Origin: Bugula neritina
Taxonomy: Eukaryota; Animalia; Bryozoa
NCBI GenBank assembly: GCA_964035545.1
Contig: OZ037766.1
Location: 1,426,001-1,490,000, forward strand
Length of the DNA stretch: 64,000 nucleotides
Direction of reading: 5' to 3'
Part shown: positions 6,254-19,389 of the stretch, in pieces
Numbering within the stretch: position 1 is the stretch's first letter
Layout of the letters: every line of letters starts with the position of its first letter
Translations under genes and position numbers: made by a program
Notes under the pieces: model-generated
The model's database searches: none
The model's input: only the letters and a program-made list of their open reading frames with translations
What the model was told of the DNA's origin: nothing

Positions 6254-7729
<1,476 letters not shown>

Positions 7730-9603: not shown

Positions 9604-12600
9604 TTACAAGTAGATGTCTTCCACTAAATCAGCCATGTGTGGAGGACAGGCTCTGAAGTCCTTGACCCCAGAAGGTATCTTCCTCCACGGCACCCAGGCG
9701 TGACCGTGGTACACCGGGGAGCCCCATCTTTCTGTGGGACAGTTTCGAGGAGCCTGAGATCTGTAAGACAAGACTACAGGTTGGTGTCCTGATACAACAC
9801 TCAGCCTATGTATGTGCTGTCTCTATACAACACTCAGCCTATGTATGTGCTGTCTCTATACAACACTCAGCCTATGTATGTGCTGTCTCTATACAACACT
9901 CAGCCTATGTATCTGCTGTCCCCATACAACACTCAGCCTATGTAGTGTCTCTATACAACACTCAGCCTATGTAGTGTCCCCATACAACACTAAGCCTATG
10001 TATGTGCTGTCTCTATACAACACTCAGCCTATGTAGTGTCTCTATACAACACTCAGCCTATGTAGTGTCCCCATACAACACTCAGCCTATGTATCTGCTG
10101 TCCCCATACAACACTCAGCCTATGTAGTGTCTCTATACAACACTCAGCCTATGTATGTGCTGTTTCCATACAACACTCAGCCTATGTATGTGCTGTCTCT
10201 ATACAACACTCAGCCTATGTATGTGCTGTCTCTATACAACACTCAGCCTATGTATGTGCTGTCTCTATACAACACTCAGCCTATGTATTTGCTGTCTCTA
10301 TACAACACTCAGCCTATGTATGTGCTGTTTCCATACAACACTCAGCCTAAGTAATACTACTCTAGACAGATACATGGCTCATAAATGCAACGCGCCGGTA
10401 GAATACCAAACCTATCACTGCTCCTCTGTGAGAAGATGTAATACCACTCCTACCTGCTGGCAACATCAAGCAGACGTTTCACCATCTTCTGCACCAACTG
10501 GGGATGCTGCTGGGCAATGTTGTTGAACTCACATGGATCGTCTACCACGTGGAAGAGACAGGGGGACGTCTCATTGTTGCAGGCGGGTAGGGACGGGTCT
10601 CTGGCCCCACACTTTACTGTAAGGTTGAGTTTAGACACGTCTATGCTCTCGGGCTTGTACCAGTCATCATAGCTTTTTGTAAAGGATCCCTCGCTACCAA
10701 TGACCTTGACATACATAATATGACCTTGACGTGCAGATAATGACCTTGACACACATAATATGTAGAAAATGACCTTGACATGTAGAATATGACCTTGACA
10801 TGCAGTCTTGCCCACGTTGAGCAACTTCAACATGAAGCAACATTTATAAGAATCACACAATATTACAGCAGACGACTCACGATAACTTTGTAGGGACCTT
10901 GTCTAATGGCTCCAGTGGTTCTATCATAGTTGTGAATTATCTCATCTCTGGGAGAAGGCAAATCCTCGCTCAGAGTCTGCCACAGGTTCATCCCATAGAG
11001 TTCTGACTTGTTGTAAGTAGAGTTGGCACCTGCGTATACACACCCGATAAACAACACATTACGACAGTAGCACACAGGCTACAAAGAGTGACGGCTGCTA
11101 GAACAATGTCTCAACTAACCAGCTAAATGCATAATCGTAGGCAACCAATCAGAGACGTGCACCATCTGATTACTGACTCGTCCTTTTTTCTTCAACAATG
11201 GACTCCATATGAAGCCTGTGGCACGCATTCCCCCTTCCCAGTACGTAGCCTTAAGTCCTCTACAACAAGGTAAGAGTAGACAACTTGCACAGAGTCTAAT
11301 GCTGATTGGCCGAACTACATCACATAAGGTACCATAAGCACCAACCTTAAAGGCCAGTTGCAGGCGTGATTCATATCGAACCCGTTAGCTGGCCCGCCAT
11401 TGTCCGTGCTGAAGATGATCACCGAGTTGTCTAGAAGACCTTTCGCTGACAAAGCTGCCGTTACGTTTCCAATGGCATCATCTAGAGCTGACACCATTCC
11501 TATAAGAGCAGTGATTGGGCAATGTGATGGAACGTCTATTCTCATTTGACATGAAGATAAACAAACATTATTTTACAATACTTGTCTCACTTTGTGTTTA
11601 CTGTGAGAAAAAGTAATGATATTACAGAATTAAAATAATTTTAAGAGCGCAATATTATAGGATCAGGAGTTGGTAAAATTTATCGCTTTAGATAGTTACT
11701 TCCCCGCAACAAACAACTGTATATACTACACTCAACAAACAACTGTATATACTACACACAACAAACAACTGTATAGACTACACACAACAAACAATTGTAC
11801 AGACTACACACAACAAATAACTACACAGACTACACACAAAGCATACACAACACACAAACCACTTGCGCTACACCCATGAGGTTCACAGCACTAAAGGAAA
11901 ACTTAAACATAGTTACTGAGTATACTATAAACCTTTACTTCTATCCAACTTTCTCATTAGACAACTTTCATTTGCTATTACTCCTTTTAAACTTTATAGA
12001 ATTAATATTTTTACAAGAGATAGAGCAAATGCAATAGAAACAAATATGAAACCTGTTATATAACCGGGTTAGGAGAATAGAAAATTTTCGTAGTACAAAT
12101 AAATTAGAAAAGCTTTTTAAAAACTAAACATGTGTTGGATTTAATTTGTAAGAACAATTTTAAACCAATTGTTTGTTAGAACTGCTTGTCCCTAAAGGAG
12201 AAAACAACTCCTATTAAATTTAAAAAATGTAGAAAGCTCAATAAAGCTGATAACAGAGCCAACACACACGCACACACTGAACACTTGGCAATGAGCTATG
12301 TTAGTAGATGTGTTGTTATGTTGGAGTAAGTCACGGTAAACAGGAAACACACCAGCAAACAGCTTCCTGTTTGGATCGGAGATGTACGGGAATCTGTCTG
12401 TGTATTTCTTGGGGGCCTCTAAAGGGTTGGATCCAGTAGACAGGGGGTTACCTGAATGCACTGCTTGAAACGGCAGATACAGAAAGAGGGGCTACAATAA
12501 TAATATATAGAGGCGCATGCAGAGAGGTGGTCTAAAGTCAGTCATGCAAACAATAGCTTCAAGAGACACACACATATGTGCAAGTAAATCCTGCTCATAT

Positions 12601-15600
12601 ATAAAACTCACATAAGTTTATAGTCACTATCCCTGTGAGAACTCTATGATAGAAAGGAGCTTTTTGTTAAATTGAGCCAAGGACCTATATTCAGATGAGG
12701 CACAGGAGCAATTATGACTAGATGCTCTTCCTAATATAACCAATGGCCATTGTCGGGGTTCGAACCTACGACTTCGTGCTTACTAGGCAAAAGCTCTAAC
12801 CCTAGACCATGGCTGCTCCCTAAATACTGCACATATATAGAGCAGGTAAATGGTGTACACATACACATATATATAGAGCAGGTAAATGGTGTACACATAC
12901 ACACATATATAGAGCAGGTAAATGGTGTACACTTACACACATATATAGAGCAGGTAAATGGTGTACACACACACACACACACATATATAGAGCAGGTAAA
13001 TGGTGTACACATACACATATATAGAGAGCAGGTAAATGGTGTACACATACATACATATAGAGAGCAGGTAAATGGTGTACACATACACATATATAGAGAG
13101 CAGGTAAATGGTTTACACATACACAGACAAGCAATAGTCCACTGCATACATACAGACAGACACACTCAATAAAATATAACAAGTAGTAGTTAGTTTGACA
13201 AGGGGAAGTAACTACAATTATTAGTGGAAAAGCTGGTTTGTTGGACACTGTAACAAAATGAGTTCGTCTTATTACAAAGGATAAAATTGAGATTTGAAAT
13301 TTATGCCATTCTAAACTGCCAGCATAGATTTACAAGTTGGTTTGATTTCACGCTTTTTGATAGTTTTTAAGATAACGGTTCTTTTATAGAGTGTAGAAAA
13401 ACCATCAAAATATGATGGAGATAAATCAAGCACACAGTACTTAGTAGAAAAAGAATTTTCGTTGAACAAAAAAGTTTACACAAACCAACATAGAGATGTA
13501 TATACTGTGAAAACATATTCTGCAACACTACTGGAACATAAAATGTTCAAAAATATATCATTTAGCTTTACGTAGTGTTTTTATAGGAAACTTTGTTTTC
13601 AAATCAAATTCAATTTCTGATGTACATGCTCATAGGTCAGTAAATCTCAGCCTTAAGTTCGATATACGAAGAACTGGGGAGAGAAAACCTGGAACTCAGC
13701 CTATCCTGGCCAATAGCTTCAAAATGAAGCTTTTCATAACCCAATAAACTCTACAAAAAATGCTTCAATAGCGCTCATTCTTGCACTTGTTTGCTTTCAG
13801 AGTAAAATTGTAAACAAATTTGAAAATTAAGCCAAAAGATTCAAAGTATATCATTTGCCAATCATCCATGTATGTCACTGCTCGATTCAGCGTGCAGCTA
13901 TAATAGCAAACTAACCAGCAAACAATTTCCTGTTTGGGTCAGTTATATGCGGGAATCGGTCAGTGTACTTCTTGGGGGCTTCAAGGGGATTATAGCCTGG
14001 TTGGGAGGGGATGCCAGAGTGCACAGCTTGATATGGCAAGTAGAGGAACAGAGGCTACAAGATGAGTTTACACATCATACCCAGGTGAGAGGGGAGGGGG
14101 ACCACACCCCGCAGCTTCATAGAGAATCCATGGTTAATCAACACAGAGGAGCGGTTAGTGCAACATAAAATATATGATTTTATATAATTCGAGCACTTTT
14201 AGTATTTTGTCAACAGTGAAGGTACATCTCCTGACACCTGTCTACATACTTCTATAAACTTGATTAGAATACAGAAAGCAAATCAGTTAGAAAGATTGAG
14301 TCAGTATATTTCAAAGGAGAAAACTATCCAATAGTTTAGAATTCAACAAGTAAGCTAAATAACTCTAATTTAATAAGAAGCATGTTTTCAGGCTCTCACC
14401 AACCTTACTAGTGTCATGGCTCTGTATAATTCTCTCAGCTCTGGAGGCAAACAACTCGGTTGAGTACGAGCCATTGGCTGACCTATCAAGGTCAATTCCA
14501 TCCCGGAAATCATACCCCCAGTAACCCGCTTCAGCCCAGCCTGTAACGAGTGAATTACTGTATACTCTGTATACTCTACACTGTATACTCTGTATACTCT
14601 ACTCTGTATACTCTACTTTGTATACTCTACTCTGTATACTCTACTCTGTATACTCTACTTTGTATACTCTACTCTGTATACTCTACTCTGTATACTCTAC
14701 TCTGTATACTCTACTCTGTATACTCTACAACATACCCTACCTGTGTGATCTATATAATCTTCAGCCCCCAAGTAGTAACCATAGTAACTGTCGAAACCTC
14801 TGTACAGCGGAGTCAACTCTTTGGCGAAGAAACCCAAGTGCCACTACAATAAATAAATCGTAATCAAGGGTATTCTGCAGCACTTTTCTTTGAATAGCAA
14901 CCTACAGACTCACTGATTCGAACCAGCACAATGTTCTGCACTCTAAAACTACACTCTGTAACACAAGGAGACAAACGTTTGAAGAGATCACTCGTAACAA
15001 CACACGAAGCTTTCCTAGAGCCCTTATACCCTGATTTATGCATATTCTCACTATTTAGATTGTCTCAAACACTCCACTGATAGAAAAAGAGGCGATAACA
15101 AAATAGCATAAAATTACTCAAACAGTTGAAGCTTTCACCAATGACATGCATTTAGTTAAAGAACAAGCCAGGAGAGAGAAACCTGCTAAATAGAAAGTCA
15201 GCATGAAATGTGATAGAGTTAGAGCTGTATAGAAACATACCAGAAATATGGTGTGAAAGATGTCAGAGAAAAGAGTTTAACCAATCAAAAGGCAGGCACT
15301 CGCATTGTGATTCAGACACCAACCAAACTACTACTATGGCAGAGTGGTAGGAATAGGAAAAAGAAAGTAAAGCATGCAGTTGTGAGATATCGCAAACCTT
15401 TCCCACTGCATGAGTGACGTAACCCAACTCTTTGAGGTACTGAGGCAGGATTGTCTCATTGGTACCCAGCCCATAGGGCTCGGGGCCCACAATCACATTT
15501 CTCTGTAAACCTGTAACATACAGCGTACAGTCTGAGTAGAGTCTGAGTAGAGAGGAGATAATCTACCTTTCCAACAGCATGCGTGGCATAGCCTATGTCT

Positions 15601-16526
15601 CTCAGATACTCTGGCATTATTGTTTCATTGGTACCAAGGCCCCAAGGTGCATGCCCGAGTATTACACTACGCTGTAGCCCTGAAACCAAGTAAGACAACT
15701 CTGAAACTGATGCAGTAAAATAAGAAGACATTAATAGACTTTGAGTAAAATAAAAAGACTTCAAAGTTCATGAAACTACAATTTAGTCTGCAGCTTTGAT
15801 TTACATCTATAAAAAGCAAAAGTAATATTTATCATTTTTGCTAAATTATAAAATCAGTTTAATTGTTCTGAATTCTCACAAAAAATAAAATGTCATAAAC
15901 TATAACACAATATAAAATACAATACAATATAAAATATAAAACAATGTAAAATACAACACAATATGAAATAATGTAAAATGTAGCATAATATAAAATACAA
16001 AATAACTGTGAATTTATATTATAAATAATGTGTCATATAATCTGAAAACTAGAATTAACTTTTTTGATAAATTTTCTCCCATTTACATCCACTTCAAGTT
16101 CTATATGACAATATAATCTACCTTATCGGAATTTATTATCTACTAACCCAGTTGCATTGGATGTCGGCCCGTCATCAAGGCCCCTCTCGTTGGAGTACAG
16201 ATGGGAGACACGTAGTAGTTATTCAAAAATATACCCTCATGTACCAATTTGTCAATATTAGGGGTGGGGATCTGAGGCGACCCATGAAAGCTAACATCAT
16301 TCCATCCCTAGAAAGAACCAAAACGTACATCCTACTAGTTATTTACATGCAATGAATATTTCTATAACAAACTGGAAATTTTTGTGATGATTTTTTGAAA
16401 GCAAGCAAAATAATTTGATCTTACCAGATCATCAGCCAATATCACTATAACATTAGGCTTCGCAGCGCATTCTGTCTGTGATATCCATGTGAGATATACC
16501 AGCAGCACAAACTTACAATACTTCAT
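9604..16526 (-). CDS. ARSB: Arylsulfatase B/I/J family sulfatase with signal peptide and two duplicated exon pairs
   Basis: [14 protein letters not shown]...[17 protein letters not shown]; formylglycine motif [12 protein letters not shown]; THAVGKWHLG; RGFDSYYGY; AVH; STDNGG; [15 protein letters not shown]; HVSDWLPT; [11 protein letters not shown]. Exons: 16425-16526, 16148-16307, [15567-15679 or 15398-15510], 14741-14843, 14404-14540, [13916-14054 or 12353-12491], ~11347-11499, ~11120-11259, ~10881-11029, ~10454-10704, 9604-9761. Exact paralogue assignment uncertain. Confidence 0.93.
9790..10350. repeat. ~29-33-bp intronic minisatellite in last sulfatase intron
   Basis: Unit TACAACACTCAGCCTATGTA(TGTGC)TGTCTCTA; begins about 30 bp from the acceptor at 9762. 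Confidence 0.92.
12745..12816 (-). mobile_element. tRNA-derived element (SINE head or tRNA-Thr(AGT) pseudogene)
   Basis: Minus strand GCAGCCATGGTCTAGGGTTAGAGCTTTTGCCTAGTAAGCACGAAGTCGTAGGTTCGAACCCCGACAATGGCC: A box, TGC-CTAGTAA-GCA anticodon-like loop, B box GGTTCGAACCC; acceptor and T stems poorly paired. Confidence 0.6.
12830..13125. repeat. ~36-bp minisatellite
   Basis: Unit ATATATAGAGCAGGTAAATGGTGTACACATACAC, about 8 copies. Confidence 0.9.
14556..14729. repeat. 15-bp minisatellite filling sulfatase intron 14541-14740
   Basis: Unit TGTATACTCTACTC(T). Confidence 0.9.
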
Positions 16527-17889: not shown

Positions 17890-19389
17890 ATGGAAAACCC
17901 TCCTGAAAATGTAACTAGAAGCACAACTATTTTTCAGCCTTCTGTTATTTTCTTAGTTATCAAAAACAGCTATGTGGTTAAAGGGGCCTCTACTGCTTTA
18001 CTATTATTTTATTGTTTATCTTTTATCGATACCGTATTCGACCATTTGTGCGTGGTACCAGGCTATGTCTTGCCACCTAACTTCTGGGTTTGGACTCTCC
18101 TAACGCACAACTTTCTTCAATCACATATATTAATGGTAGTCGTGGACATCTGTGTCGTAATAATGTCTGGTAAAATTCTCGAACCTCTGTGGAGTCTTTT
18201 GCAAATTGGAATTTTCTTTGCAGTTGTTACATCTTCTGCTGCTTTGATCACAGCAAGTTTTTATGTGATCTTTTACTATGTCACAGGGAACACCGACTAT
18301 CTGTTTAAAACTCATATTCATGGACTAGGTGCTTATATTGGTGGATTTTGTGTTACTGTAAAGCAGTTGATGCCCGAAGAAGTATTGATACGACTGCCTT
18401 TTGGAAAAATACGAGCTAAACATGTACCATTAATTTGTCTGAGTATTGCTATAACACTGTCGGCCTGCGGAGTATTAAATGGTCCGTATGCAATTCATTT
18501 TGGGTTCGGTGTACTCATCAGTTGGATATATTTGAGATTTTATCAAAAGCACGGTAATGGGAATACTGGGGATATGGCTGAAGAGTTCTCCTTTGCAAGG
18601 TGCGTACGTAGTTGATTATTTCGCCAGTAACTAATTCATCAACTATAAGTATAATTAAACAGTTTTAAGTACCAAAATGAGGTAGGTGTCATTGAATTTG
18701 ATAACTTTATTAATTTGAAAGTTTTTTTTCTTGATTTTTACTAGTAATGATTAGATATTTATCTTATTAATTATAAATTGAATTAATTATAAATCAAAAT
18801 TGAGGTAAAACTGAAAATTCTTTAATTGCACAATTTTTATTTTACTAAATTCTCTCTGACTTTTTGTTTTAGCTTTTTCCCTCCACCATTAGAGATATTT
18901 GTTGCTATAATATCAAACACCATATTCAGTCTTCTTATTCGAATAAAAGTTTGTAAAAAGCCACAACGTAAATATGATGTTAGCTCTCCCACTACCATAA
19001 CCGTCACTTTGCCTGGTACAGATCCTGTCGATGCAGAGCGGCGAAGGTAACTTCTAGATCTATTTTAGTCTTTTTTACTCAATGTTTCTGCAAATGGTTA
19101 TTTAACAATGTCAAGTTTTTGCTAAAATGGAATGTAGTTATAACTAAAACTTTTATGTTTTACTAAATAACTTTACTATTGCAGACAATTAGCTATCAAA
19201 GCTCTGAATGAGAGACTAAGTAAGGCTGGTGAAGAGACTAGTTGGCCAGGTCTGGAAGATGATGACGATGTGAAGGACATTCCAGAGGTGACTGTTGCTA
19301 CGGAAACCCTGGACAGCTCTACCCCAGCAGTCAATCAAGACTTGGTAGCCACAGACATAAACAATGCTAATATCACATCTAACTCCTAG
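17890..19389 (+). CDS. TMEM115: Transmembrane protein 115 (rhomboid-like Golgi protein)
   Basis: Exons 17890-18599, ~18873-19046, ~19185-19389. Motifs: PPNFWVWTLLTH, LEPLW, SWIYLRFYQKH, GDMAEEFSFASFFP, TLPGTDPVDAERRRQLAIKALNERL. Confidence 0.93.

What the first reader, a model, noticed from the sequence alone, without database searches (positions are those of the whole stretch)
12353..15679. Arylsulfatase with two mutually exclusive exon pairs that swap active-site loops
Seen: exon 3 occurs twice (15567-15679 and 15398-15510, both 113 nt, phase 1-0) and exon 6 occurs twice (13916-14054 and 12353-12491, both 139 nt, phase 0-1). All four have intact AG/GT ends and open frames, and many differences are synonymous. 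Including both copies, or neither, shifts the frame. The amino-acid changes cluster: [14 protein letters not shown] vs [14 protein letters not shown], just after the CTPTR formylglycine helix; and [15 protein letters not shown] vs [15 protein letters not shown], directly after the conserved His. Established: in ARSB-family sulfatases the AVH/SVH His is an active-site residue. Inference: one gene makes 2-4 enzymes with different substrate pockets by combinatorial or coupled splicing. I know of no such arrangement described for a sulfatase.
Basis: partly seen in the sequence, partly recalled or inferred. Interest (0 to 1): 0.85.

Follow-up and report, generated by a model that had tools for sequence, protein, structure and literature searches.

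The report
Sulfatase gene with two swappable exon pairs
A moss-animal (Bugula) arylsulfatase B-like gene carries two old, well-preserved pairs of alternative exons that re-write two loops beside its catalytic residues; the same trick at the first exon is already annotated, but apparently undescribed, in mussels, clams, horseshoe crabs and amphioxus.

Summary
A minus-strand, 13-exon ARSB-like sulfatase gene (CDS 16526-9604) has exon 3 twice (113 nt each, 56-nt intron between) and exon 6 twice (139 nt each). All four have AG/GT ends and open frames. Only one-of-each splicing gives a 534-aa ORF; every other combination gives a premature stop.

The copies are old: nucleotide identity is 68-71%, synonymous sites are saturated (pS about 0.8) and dN is 0.12-0.18.

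- Both pairs are present in Bugula neritina. Exon 6b is 139/139 identical there, against about 83-88% in introns.
- The exon-6 pair is also present in a third, more distant bugulid.
- Watersipora has single exons.
- Spliced mRNA contigs of a fourth relative join exon 5 to a 6b-type exon to exon 7, after an exon 3 with the 3a-type loop.

The arrangement is not unique. RefSeq isoforms of ARSB/I/J-like genes in Mytilus, Mercenaria, Tachypleus/Limulus and Branchiostoma swap the same exon 3, apparently through independent duplications. I found no paper describing this. The exon-6 switch looks bugulid-specific.

Verdict: a real, functional double cluster of mutually exclusive exons, and a new member of a known kind. 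The effect on the substrate pocket is plausible but untested.

The parts
9604..16526 (-). Coding span of the ARSB-like sulfatase gene: 11 exon positions, 13 exons counting both copies of exons 3 and 6.
   Evidence: Frame-consistent model with AG/GT at every junction, giving a 534-aa ORF. It is 95-100% identical, exon by exon, to B. neritina EB796_001783 (P0151). Pfam Sulfatase PF00884 matches exons 2, 7 and 8.
16425..16526 (-). Exon 1: start codon, signal peptide and the metal-binding DD motif.
16148..16307 (-). Exon 2: formylglycine motif CTPTR and its helix; ends in phase 1.
15567..15679 (-). Exon 3a (113 nt): loop [12 protein letters not shown], ending at the catalytic Lys (VGK).
   Evidence: Differs at 3/113 nt from B. 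neritina.
15511..15566 (-). 56-nt intron between 3a and 3b (45 nt in B. neritina). It is shorter than any other intron of the gene (the next shortest is 86 nt).
15398..15510 (-). Exon 3b (113 nt): loop [12 protein letters not shown], ending at the catalytic Lys.
   Evidence: Differs at 5/113 nt from B. neritina, 3 synonymous and 2 not. The same exon lies on an independent B. neritina metagenome contig, L106/P0368.
15373..15378 (-). TGCATG (Rbfox-type hexamer) 20 nt downstream of exon 3b.
   Evidence: The same element is present in L022 but 206 nt from the exon.
14741..14843 (-). Exon 4, constitutive; starts WH (catalytic His, ARSB His147 equivalent).
14404..14540 (-). Exon 5, constitutive.
13916..14054 (-). 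Exon 6a (139 nt): AVH, then the loop [12 protein letters not shown]. It replaces the near-universal Asn at His+3 by Ile.
   Evidence: Orthologues lie in L022 and L060/L062.
12353..12491 (-). Exon 6b (139 nt): AVH, then the loop [12 protein letters not shown]; keeps the Asn.
   Evidence: It is 139/139 identical to B. neritina. The b-type exon is spliced into the mRNA contigs L026 and L020 of a relative.
12516..12548 (-). Two TGCATG hexamers 57 and 30 nt upstream of exon 6b.
   Evidence: Both are conserved in L022, at 66 and 37 nt upstream.
11346..11499 (-). Exon 7, constitutive (DNGG metal and catalytic motif).
11120..11259 (-). Exon 8, constitutive (catalytic Lys in RGLK).
10881..11029 (-). 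Exon 9.
10454..10704 (-). Exon 10.
9604..9760 (-). Exon 11, including the stop codon.

Best explanation
This is an arylsulfatase B-like (formylglycine-dependent, S1-family) sulfatase gene of a bryozoan very close to Bugula neritina. It contains two clusters of mutually exclusive exons made by old tandem exon duplications. Each mRNA takes one copy of exon 3 and one copy of exon 6.

**How exclusivity is enforced.**
- Reading frame (shown): 113 and 139 are not multiples of 3, so double inclusion or skipping gives an early stop. Removal of such mRNAs by nonsense-mediated decay is inferred.
- Steric hindrance for exon 3 (inferred): the 3a-3b intron is only 56 nt here and 45 nt in B. neritina, probably too short to be spliced out.

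**What the switches change.**
- Exon 3 re-writes a loop between the formylglycine helix and the catalytic Lys.
- Exon 6 re-writes a lineage-specific 9-residue insertion that starts three residues after the catalytic-acid His. In copy 6a the nearly universal Asn is replaced by Ile.
- The likely effect (inferred) is up to four enzyme forms with the same catalytic core but differently shaped glycan-binding subsites.

**Possible regulation.** TGCATG hexamers beside the b exons hint at Rbfox-type tissue-specific control. This is a weak inference.
For: **Anatomy and frame.**

**Age and selection on the copies.** pS is 0.83 (saturated) against pN 0.13 between copies, Fisher P about 1e-23.

**Conservation of every copy against B. 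neritina (L022).**
- Intron identity is about 83-88%.
- Exon 3a differs at 3/113 nt, 3b at 5/113, 6a at 8/139 and 6b at 0/139.
- Splice sites are kept.
- Exon 6b has 0 of 34 synonymous sites changed, against 18% in constitutive exons (P=0.001). Its flanks are 94-95% identical. Both are typical of regulated alternative exons.

**Depth of the exon-6 pair.**
- Clear a and b orthologues lie in a third bugulid, L060/L062.
- The a and b groups separate in the tree (SH-aLRT 91 and 89).
- Watersipora has single exons.

**Expression.**
- mRNA contigs L026 (full ORF) and L020 from two metatranscriptomes join exons 2, 3, 4, 5, 6b-type, 7 and onward with no second copy.
- Their exon 6 is 86% identical at the DNA level to species X's 6b and 73% to its 6a.
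- The B. neritina model P0151 uses 3a plus 6a.

**Position in the fold.**
- The AlphaFold model of the Watersipora orthologue (pLDDT 84.5) puts both variable stretches in coil.
- The best structural match is human ARSB 1FSU, followed by 4-O-sulfatases of family S1_19.
[quoted passage not shown] Phe103 of that enzyme's -1 subsite 'aromatic shelf' lies in the loop aligned between positions 96 and 97 of the orthologue, inside the 3a/3b-variable stretch (PMC6923384).
- The a/b differences fall on family-wide variable columns set between invariant ones.

**Parallel cases.** The same exon is alternatively used in RefSeq models of Mytilus, Mercenaria, Tachypleus/Limulus and Branchiostoma. The tandem copies were verified in genomic DNA of Mytilus edulis and Tachypleus.
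Against: - There is no RNA evidence from this genome.
- No transcript with a 3b-type exon was found in any species.
- The only mRNA evidence for 6b comes from a different species, for which I cannot show that 6a exists in the genome.
- The exon-3 pair is documented only in the B. neritina group. Exon 3 of the relative's mRNA could be an unduplicated ancestral exon.
- No distances to the active site could be measured, because the tools return no coordinates. The pocket argument rests on alignment to PsS1_19B and ARSB.
- No conserved intronic pairing elements were found for the exon-6 cluster; inverted repeats are at chance level and introns are not alignable to species X.
- The TGCATG pattern is not kept in species X, where the single motif lies upstream of 6a.
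Confidence: 0.75

Rival explanations
1. Both copies of each pair are used, but the isoforms differ in something other than substrate choice. Examples are folding, stability, pH optimum, glycosylation, oligomerisation, or tissue and developmental expression with equivalent chemistry.
For: - Several a/b differences in exon 3 lie on helix 109-115 and strand 119-125 of the model, not in the loop.
- No assay or measured distance links the loops to the substrate.
- The TGCATG motifs suggest tissue-specific regulation, which could be the main point of the arrangement.
Against: - The largest changes sit three to nine residues after the catalytic-acid His, and in the loop that carries a -1 subsite residue in PsS1_19B.
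- Exon 6a alters a position that is Asn in 35 of 41 homologues.
- The same exon was duplicated independently in several phyla, which points to a recurrent functional pay-off at that loop.
Confidence: 0.17
2. One copy of each pair is an unused relic (pseudo-exon), and the gene makes a single protein.
For: - The only gene model of the closest species uses 3a plus 6a.
- No 3b transcript was seen.
- No reads could be examined.
Against: - Synonymous sites between copies are saturated, yet frames, splice sites and 70-83% of residues are kept.
- Each copy is far better conserved between two species than the introns; 6b is identical over 139 nt.
- 6a and 6b are both kept in a third species.
- A 6b-type exon is in mRNA of a relative.
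Confidence: 0.04
3. The second copies act mainly as 'poison' exons: regulated double inclusion shifts the frame and lowers expression through nonsense-mediated decay, rather than producing alternative proteins.
For: - Double inclusion gives an early stop.
- The strong synonymous-site conservation of 6b would also fit an RNA-level role.
Against: - A poison exon needs no protein-level conservation, yet dN is far below dS between copies and between species.
- 6b is the only exon-6 copy in the relative's productive mRNA.
- The 45-56-nt intron makes 3a-3b double inclusion unlikely.
Confidence: 0.03
4. The duplicates are an assembly artefact, such as collapsed or expanded haplotypes.
For: None beyond the general possibility.
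Against: - The copies are only 68-71% identical, with unalignable flanks.
- The same arrangement is present in an independent B. neritina assembly, in a JGI metagenome contig and in ENA contigs of another species.
Confidence: 0.01

Closest known systems
RefSeq isoform models of ARSB/ARSI/ARSJ-like genes in Mytilus spp., Mercenaria mercenaria, Tachypleus/Limulus and Branchiostoma spp. (exon 3 and/or exon 4 alternatives), and in sea urchins (exon 4)
   Same: - The very same exon is swapped, from Gly|LQ after the formylglycine helix to VGK|WH, with identical boundaries.
- The copies lie in tandem in one gene in Mytilus edulis (L107) and Tachypleus (L108).
- The variable positions are the same, including the aromatic residue of P[WYF]GL.
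- Two clusters combined in one gene also occur in Mercenaria and Branchiostoma (exons 3 and 4).
   Different: - None of these has an alternative exon 6; the post-His loop switch is seen only in bugulids.
- Intervening introns are kilobases long (about 3.2 kb in Mytilus, about 8.6 kb in Tachypleus), not 45-56 nt.
- In the exon-3 tree the copies group by lineage, so the duplications look independent (only 37 columns, weak resolution).
- These are automatic annotations. I found no paper describing them.
Human arylsulfatase B (N-acetylgalactosamine-4-sulfatase, PDB 1FSU)
   Same: - It is the best sequence and fold match (E 5e-52 over 210 residues; Foldseek E 3e-54, TM 0.89, 39% identity for the orthologue model).
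- All listed catalytic residues have counterparts: DD, CxPxR, K-x-H, His242 and DN (PMC7404199 Table 3; PMC6282714).
   Different: - Human ARSB has single exons.
- It lacks the 9-residue insertion after His242.
- In the exon-3 loop it has Cys residues where the bryozoan has none.
Classical mutually exclusive exon pairs enforced by a too-short intron or by frame (for example alpha-tropomyosin exons 2/3; genome-wide tandem-exon-duplication MXEs). This comparison is from my own knowledge, not checked here.
   Same: - Tandem homologous exons of equal length and phase.
- One pair is separated by an intron shorter than any other in the gene.
- The exon lengths are not divisible by 3, so errors are out of frame.
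   Different: - The minimal spliceable intron of bryozoans is unknown, so steric hindrance is only inferred.
- No competing RNA structures were found for the exon-6 pair.
PsS1_19B exo-4S kappa-carrageenan sulfatase (PDB 6PRM/6PSM)
   Same: - It is the second-best structural match.
- Catalytic-acid His233 aligns with the AVH His.
- Phe103 of the -1 subsite lies in the loop aligned with the exon-3 variable stretch.
   Different: - It is a bacterial enzyme, about 28% identical.
- Its loop carries a 9-residue insertion that the bryozoan lacks.
- It lacks the bryozoan's post-His insertion.

Membership tests
S1 formylglycine-dependent sulfatase (Pfam PF00884) | C-x-P-x-R formylglycine motif | tested here: met
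   CTPTR is in exon 2. Pfam Sulfatase matches exon 2 at E 3.6e-9, above the cut-off.
S1 formylglycine-dependent sulfatase (Pfam PF00884) | Metal-binding and catalytic residues: DD, K-x-H, catalytic-acid His, DN, second Lys | tested here: met
   - ADDLGWND is in exon 1.
- GK|WH spans the exon 3/4 junction for both 3a and 3b.
- AVH is in both 6a and 6b.
- TDNGG is in exon 7 and RGLK in exon 8.
- These columns are invariant in 41 homologues and align with the ARSB residues listed in PMC7404199 through.
S1 formylglycine-dependent sulfatase (Pfam PF00884) | Sulfate-ester hydrolase activity | not testable with these tools
   Needs expression with a formylglycine-generating enzyme and an assay.
ARSB/ARSI/ARSJ clade of animal sulfatases | Closest solved and named relatives are ARSB-type, over the full length | tested here: met
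   - 1FSU is the top hit by sequence and by fold.
- All close database relatives are named arylsulfatase B/I/J-like by their sources.
- Orthology to one particular vertebrate gene was not resolved.
Cluster of mutually exclusive exons from tandem exon duplication | Adjacent homologous exons of the same length and phase with intact splice sites | tested here: met
Cluster of mutually exclusive exons from tandem exon duplication | Exactly one copy keeps the frame; both or none disrupt it | tested here: met
Cluster of mutually exclusive exons from tandem exon duplication | Each copy is under purifying selection as coding sequence | tested here: met
   Between copies. Between species, for each copy. 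In a third species, for exon 6.
Cluster of mutually exclusive exons from tandem exon duplication | Transcripts carry one copy only | tested here: inconclusive
   The mRNA contigs L026 and L020 of a relative carry one exon 3 and one exon 6. No reads of this genome were available.
Cluster of mutually exclusive exons from tandem exon duplication | Both alternatives are seen in transcripts of one species | not testable with these tools
The databases held only a 3a+6a gene model (B. neritina) and mRNAs of another species with a 3a-type loop and a 6b-type exon.

The most novel reading that the evidence does not exclude
The loop exon after the formylglycine helix of ARSB-like sulfatases has been tandemly duplicated and turned into a splicing switch independently in at least five animal lineages: bryozoans, bivalves, horseshoe crabs, amphioxus and, for the neighbouring exon, sea urchins. 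This would mark the loop as the family's main specificity determinant. Bugulids have added a second, unique switch directly after the catalytic-acid His, one that removes a near-universal Asn. One gene would then yield up to four sulfatases with distinct sulfated-glycan specificities, chosen per tissue by Rbfox-type regulation.
Probability: 0.3. Interest if true: 0.65.

Novelty: new member of a known kind. Interest (0 to 1): 0.5.

Why it matters
Which loops set substrate choice in animal carbohydrate sulfatases is poorly known. For ARSB, ARSI and ARSJ it matters for lysosomal disease and for glycosaminoglycan biology.

Here evolution has marked two short loops as the parts worth varying while the catalytic core stays fixed. 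It has done so repeatedly for the first loop, in unrelated phyla. That gives a small, natural set of variants to express and compare: two by two in Bugula, three by three in amphioxus.

The gene is also a compact system for studying how mutual exclusivity is enforced. One pair has a 45-56-nt intron; the other has a long intron and relies on frame alone.

As a phenomenon, mutually exclusive exons from tandem duplication are well known, and the sulfatase cases already sit unnoticed in RefSeq. The finding is therefore a useful example rather than a new principle.

Tried and rejected
- **Joined isoforms.** Exons were searched one by one by reference. The four joined isoforms were built only inside a local script, to check frames. 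Folding used the full-length Watersipora orthologue P0152 instead.
- I redid it by coordinates.
- **Exon 6a against the PDB.** No hit. The longer P0152:60-270 query was needed.
- **Competing RNA structures for the exon-6 cluster.** Inverted repeats of 14-28 nt at 71-88% complementarity are what chance gives. Introns cannot be aligned to species X, so conservation could not be used. The idea is unsupported.
- **Early reading corrected.** I first took the relative's mRNA to be 3b-type, from the partial exon 3 in L020. The full-length contig L026 shows the loop is 3a-type.
- **Exon 3b in other bugulids.** The search found only B. neritina itself, so the age of the exon-3 pair stays open.
- **Look-ups that returned nothing.** Exact-sequence look-ups of the Limulus and B. 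lanceolatum isoforms found no record.
- **tRNA-like stretch.** ARAGORN finds no tRNA in the tRNA-like stretch of the 6a-6b intron.
- **Haplotype or assembly artefact.** Rejected.
- **GALNS Tyr108.** My mapping of GALNS Tyr108 onto exon 3 rests on a sequence recalled from memory. It is not used as evidence; only the residue list is cited.
Full report
**1. What is in the sequence**

The minus strand between 16526 and 9604 encodes an arylsulfatase B-like protein. Every junction has AG/GT and a consistent phase.
- Exon 1 carries the signal peptide and the metal-binding DD.
- Exon 2 carries the formylglycine motif CTPTR.
- Exon 7 carries DNGG, and exon 8 the second catalytic Lys.
- Pfam Sulfatase matches exons 2, 7 and 8.

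Exon 3 is present twice (15679-15567 and 15510-15398, 113 nt each). Exon 6 is also present twice (14054-13916 and 12491-12353, 139 nt each). Within the window each copy finds only its twin (E 1e-16 and 3e-24), and no other exon is duplicated. The four one-of-each combinations give a 534-aa ORF. Both-or-neither at either position gives a stop in exon 3b, 4, 6b or 7.

**2. The copies are old and both are kept by selection**

Nucleotide identity between copies is 77/113 and 99/139. Of 75 differences, 50 are synonymous. The proportion of synonymous sites changed is 0.83, which is saturated, while dN is 0.12-0.18. The flanking introns are no more alike than shuffled sequence. A dead exon would not keep its frame, its splice sites and 70-83% of its residues over that much time.

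**3. Organism and relatives**

A search with exon 7 led to a metatranscriptome protein (P0003), and from there to Bugula neritina EB796_001783 (P0151) and a Watersipora subatra protein (P0152). The window is 95-100% identical to B. neritina in exons but only about 83-88% in introns. It therefore comes from a very close relative, perhaps a sibling species of the B. neritina complex.

*B. neritina (L022).* It holds both pairs in the same order. The 3a-3b intron there is 45 nt. Differences per exon are:

| Exon | Differences from the window |
|---|---|
| 3a | 3/113 nt |
| 3b | 5/113 nt (3 synonymous) |
| 6a | 8/139 nt |
| 6b | 0/139 nt |

For 6b, none of 34 synonymous sites changed, against 18% in the constitutive exons (P=0.001). 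Its flanks are 94-95% identical. Such extra silent-site and flank conservation is typical of regulated alternative exons.

*A third bugulid (ENA contigs L060/L062, species X).* It is more distant; its exon 7 is 86% identical at the protein level. It also has 6a and 6b, 205 nt apart. The orthology is clear: the a-type loop reads VPNQPGY and the b-type loop NPTSTGA. The a and b groups separate in the tree.

*Watersipora.* It has one exon 3 and one exon 6.

*Paralogues in the window's own genome.* Those on contigs C5 and C9 are separate genes with single exons.

**4. Expression evidence**

Indirect evidence comes from two intron-less contigs of two JGI metatranscriptomes. L026 holds a full 544-aa open frame, and L020 is 98.5% identical to it. 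They come from a fourth bugulid. Both run from exon 2 through a single exon 3, exons 4 and 5, a single exon 6, and exon 7 onward.
- Their exon 6 is b-type. It is 119/138 identical to species X's 6b and 101/138 to its 6a.
- Their exon 3 has the 3a-type loop (RSVILGDAPWGL).

The B. neritina gene model uses 3a plus 6a. So a 6b-type exon is certainly spliced into productive mRNA in this lineage. The a/b combination of the relative's mRNA argues against strict coupling, provided that species also has two exon-3 copies. No 3b-containing transcript was found, and alternation within one species is not shown.

**5. How exclusivity could work**

The frame rule is shown.

For exon 3, the intervening intron is 56 nt, and 45 nt in B. 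neritina. The difference is an 11-nt tandem duplication. It is the shortest intron of the gene by far; the next is 86 nt. That leaves roughly 23-41 nt between the donor and any plausible branch point. This fits the classical steric-hindrance mechanism, which I cite from my own knowledge; the fit is an inference.

For exon 6 the intron is 1424 nt here, 839 nt in B. neritina and 205 nt in species X. I found no convincing pairing elements.

TGCATG occurs six times on the sense strand of the gene, against 1.7 expected. Two copies lie 57 and 30 nt upstream of 6b, both kept in B. neritina, and one lies 20 nt downstream of 3b. In species X the single motif lies upstream of 6a instead, so this remains a lead only.

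**6. Where the differences fall in the protein**

Exon 3 runs from just after the formylglycine helix to the catalytic Lys. It aligns with ARSB 110-145. Exon 6 contains the AVH His, which aligns with ARSB His242. That residue is listed as catalytic in PMC7404199, PMC6282714 and PMC10375594.

The AlphaFold model of the Watersipora orthologue has pLDDT 84.5 and pTM 0.88.
- Residues 89-108, which include the 3a/3b-variable positions 92, 95, 97, 98 and 100, are in coil.
- Residues 214-232, which include the His and the variable positions 220-226, are also in coil.
- The best structural matches are human ARSB and then bacterial S1_19 4-O-sulfatases.

[quoted passage not shown] Using the printed alignment, with the numbering offset checked on Cys77, Phe103 and His233:
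- His233 aligns with the AVH His.
- Phe103 lies in the loop inserted between orthologue positions 96 and 97, inside the 3a/3b-variable stretch.

The exon-6 variable stretch is a 9-residue insertion relative to ARSB that begins three residues after the His. At His+3, 35 of 41 homologues have Asn. Copy 6b keeps it, while 6a has Ile (Val in species X). The a/b differences of exon 3 fall on columns that vary across the family and are set between near-invariant ones.

I could not measure distances because the tools return no coordinates. 'Active-site loops' is therefore well supported by alignment but not proven.

**7. Comparison with what is known**

Full-text searches found no paper on mutually exclusive exons in a sulfatase. 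The public annotation nevertheless holds close parallels. I aligned the NCBI isoforms of ARSB/I/J-like genes with one another.
- The isoforms differ by a block substitution of exactly this exon 3 in Mytilus edulis, M. californianus, M. trossulus, Mercenaria, Tachypleus, Limulus, Branchiostoma floridae and B. lanceolatum (three versions in the last).
- They differ by a substitution of exon 4 in Mercenaria, Branchiostoma and sea urchins.
- In genomic DNA the two exon-3 copies lie in tandem between exons 2 and 4 in Mytilus edulis and in Tachypleus.
- In a tree of the 37-residue exon the copies group by lineage. This suggests independent duplications, though resolution is weak.
- None of these genes varies exon 6.

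**8. Verdict**

The reading as a double cluster of mutually exclusive exons is strongly supported by evolutionary evidence, and partly by transcripts of a relative. The substrate-pocket effect is plausible but untested.

As a kind of system it is known, and the exon-3 switch already exists unremarked in RefSeq for other phyla. The exon-6 switch after the catalytic His, and the very short intron between 3a and 3b, are the new elements.

Noticed in passing
P0155-P0159, P0381-P0386 (Branchiostoma); P0191, P0387-P0391 (Mercenaria); P0221/P0406 and other Mytilus isoforms; P0170/P0431, P0428/P0429 (horseshoe crabs); P0208 and following, P0409/P0417 (sea urchins); loci L107, L108: RefSeq isoforms of ARSB/I/J-like genes in five other animal groups swap the homologue of exon 3 and/or exon 4. 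Tandem copies were verified in Mytilus edulis and Tachypleus DNA. Mercenaria and B. floridae also have models that include both exon-4 copies in frame.
   Followed up: partly
window 12577-13011 (intron between 6a and 6b): About 430 nt is absent from the B. neritina orthologous intron. It consists of extra copies of a 36-nt tandem repeat (12830-13125) plus a stretch that resembles the 3' half of a tRNA (about 12740-12830), possibly a SINE fragment. ARAGORN calls no tRNA there.
   Followed up: partly
window 15511-15566 versus L022 3524-3568: The 3a-3b intron differs between the two species by an 11-nt tandem duplication, giving 56 versus 45 nt. The very short length is therefore not strictly fixed.
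   Followed up: partly
window 15625-15635 / 15456-15466, and 13969-13979 / 12406-12416 (runs inside the exon copies): Islands of 11 identical nucleotides are shared by the two copies of each exon, although silent sites are otherwise saturated. Examples lie over G-T-N-E in exon 3 and A-P-K-K in exon 6. Possible causes are short gene-conversion tracts or shared splicing enhancers.
   Followed up: no
window 9792-10353 (intron 10): A 33-nt unit is repeated about 17.6 times, where B. neritina has about one unit. Other arrays lie nearby: a 14-nt array in intron 4 (14563-14728) and a roughly 900-bp (CA)n tract at about 6575-7480.
   Followed up: no
window 17890-18615 (+), and the start of L021 and L022: The upstream neighbour is a DUF1751/TMEM115-like gene on the opposite strand. 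This neighbourhood is conserved in B. neritina and Watersipora.
   Followed up: no
L020 266-268: The metatranscriptome contig L020 has an in-frame TAA in exon 5 where L026 (98.5% identical) has a Leu codon. It is either an allele or a sequencing error. It explains why the database protein P0003 starts inside exon 6.
   Followed up: partly
G000 C5:2908351-2915844 and C9:7157779-7688696: The genome holds further ARSB-like paralogues: two tandem genes on C5 and about three on C9. Each has a single exon 3 and a single exon 6.
   Followed up: partly
P0151 (B. neritina EB796_001783): The deposited gene model is incomplete. It lacks exon 1, most of exon 2, the end of exon 4 and the start of exon 9, compared with the frame-consistent model here and with the relative's mRNA.
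   Followed up: partly
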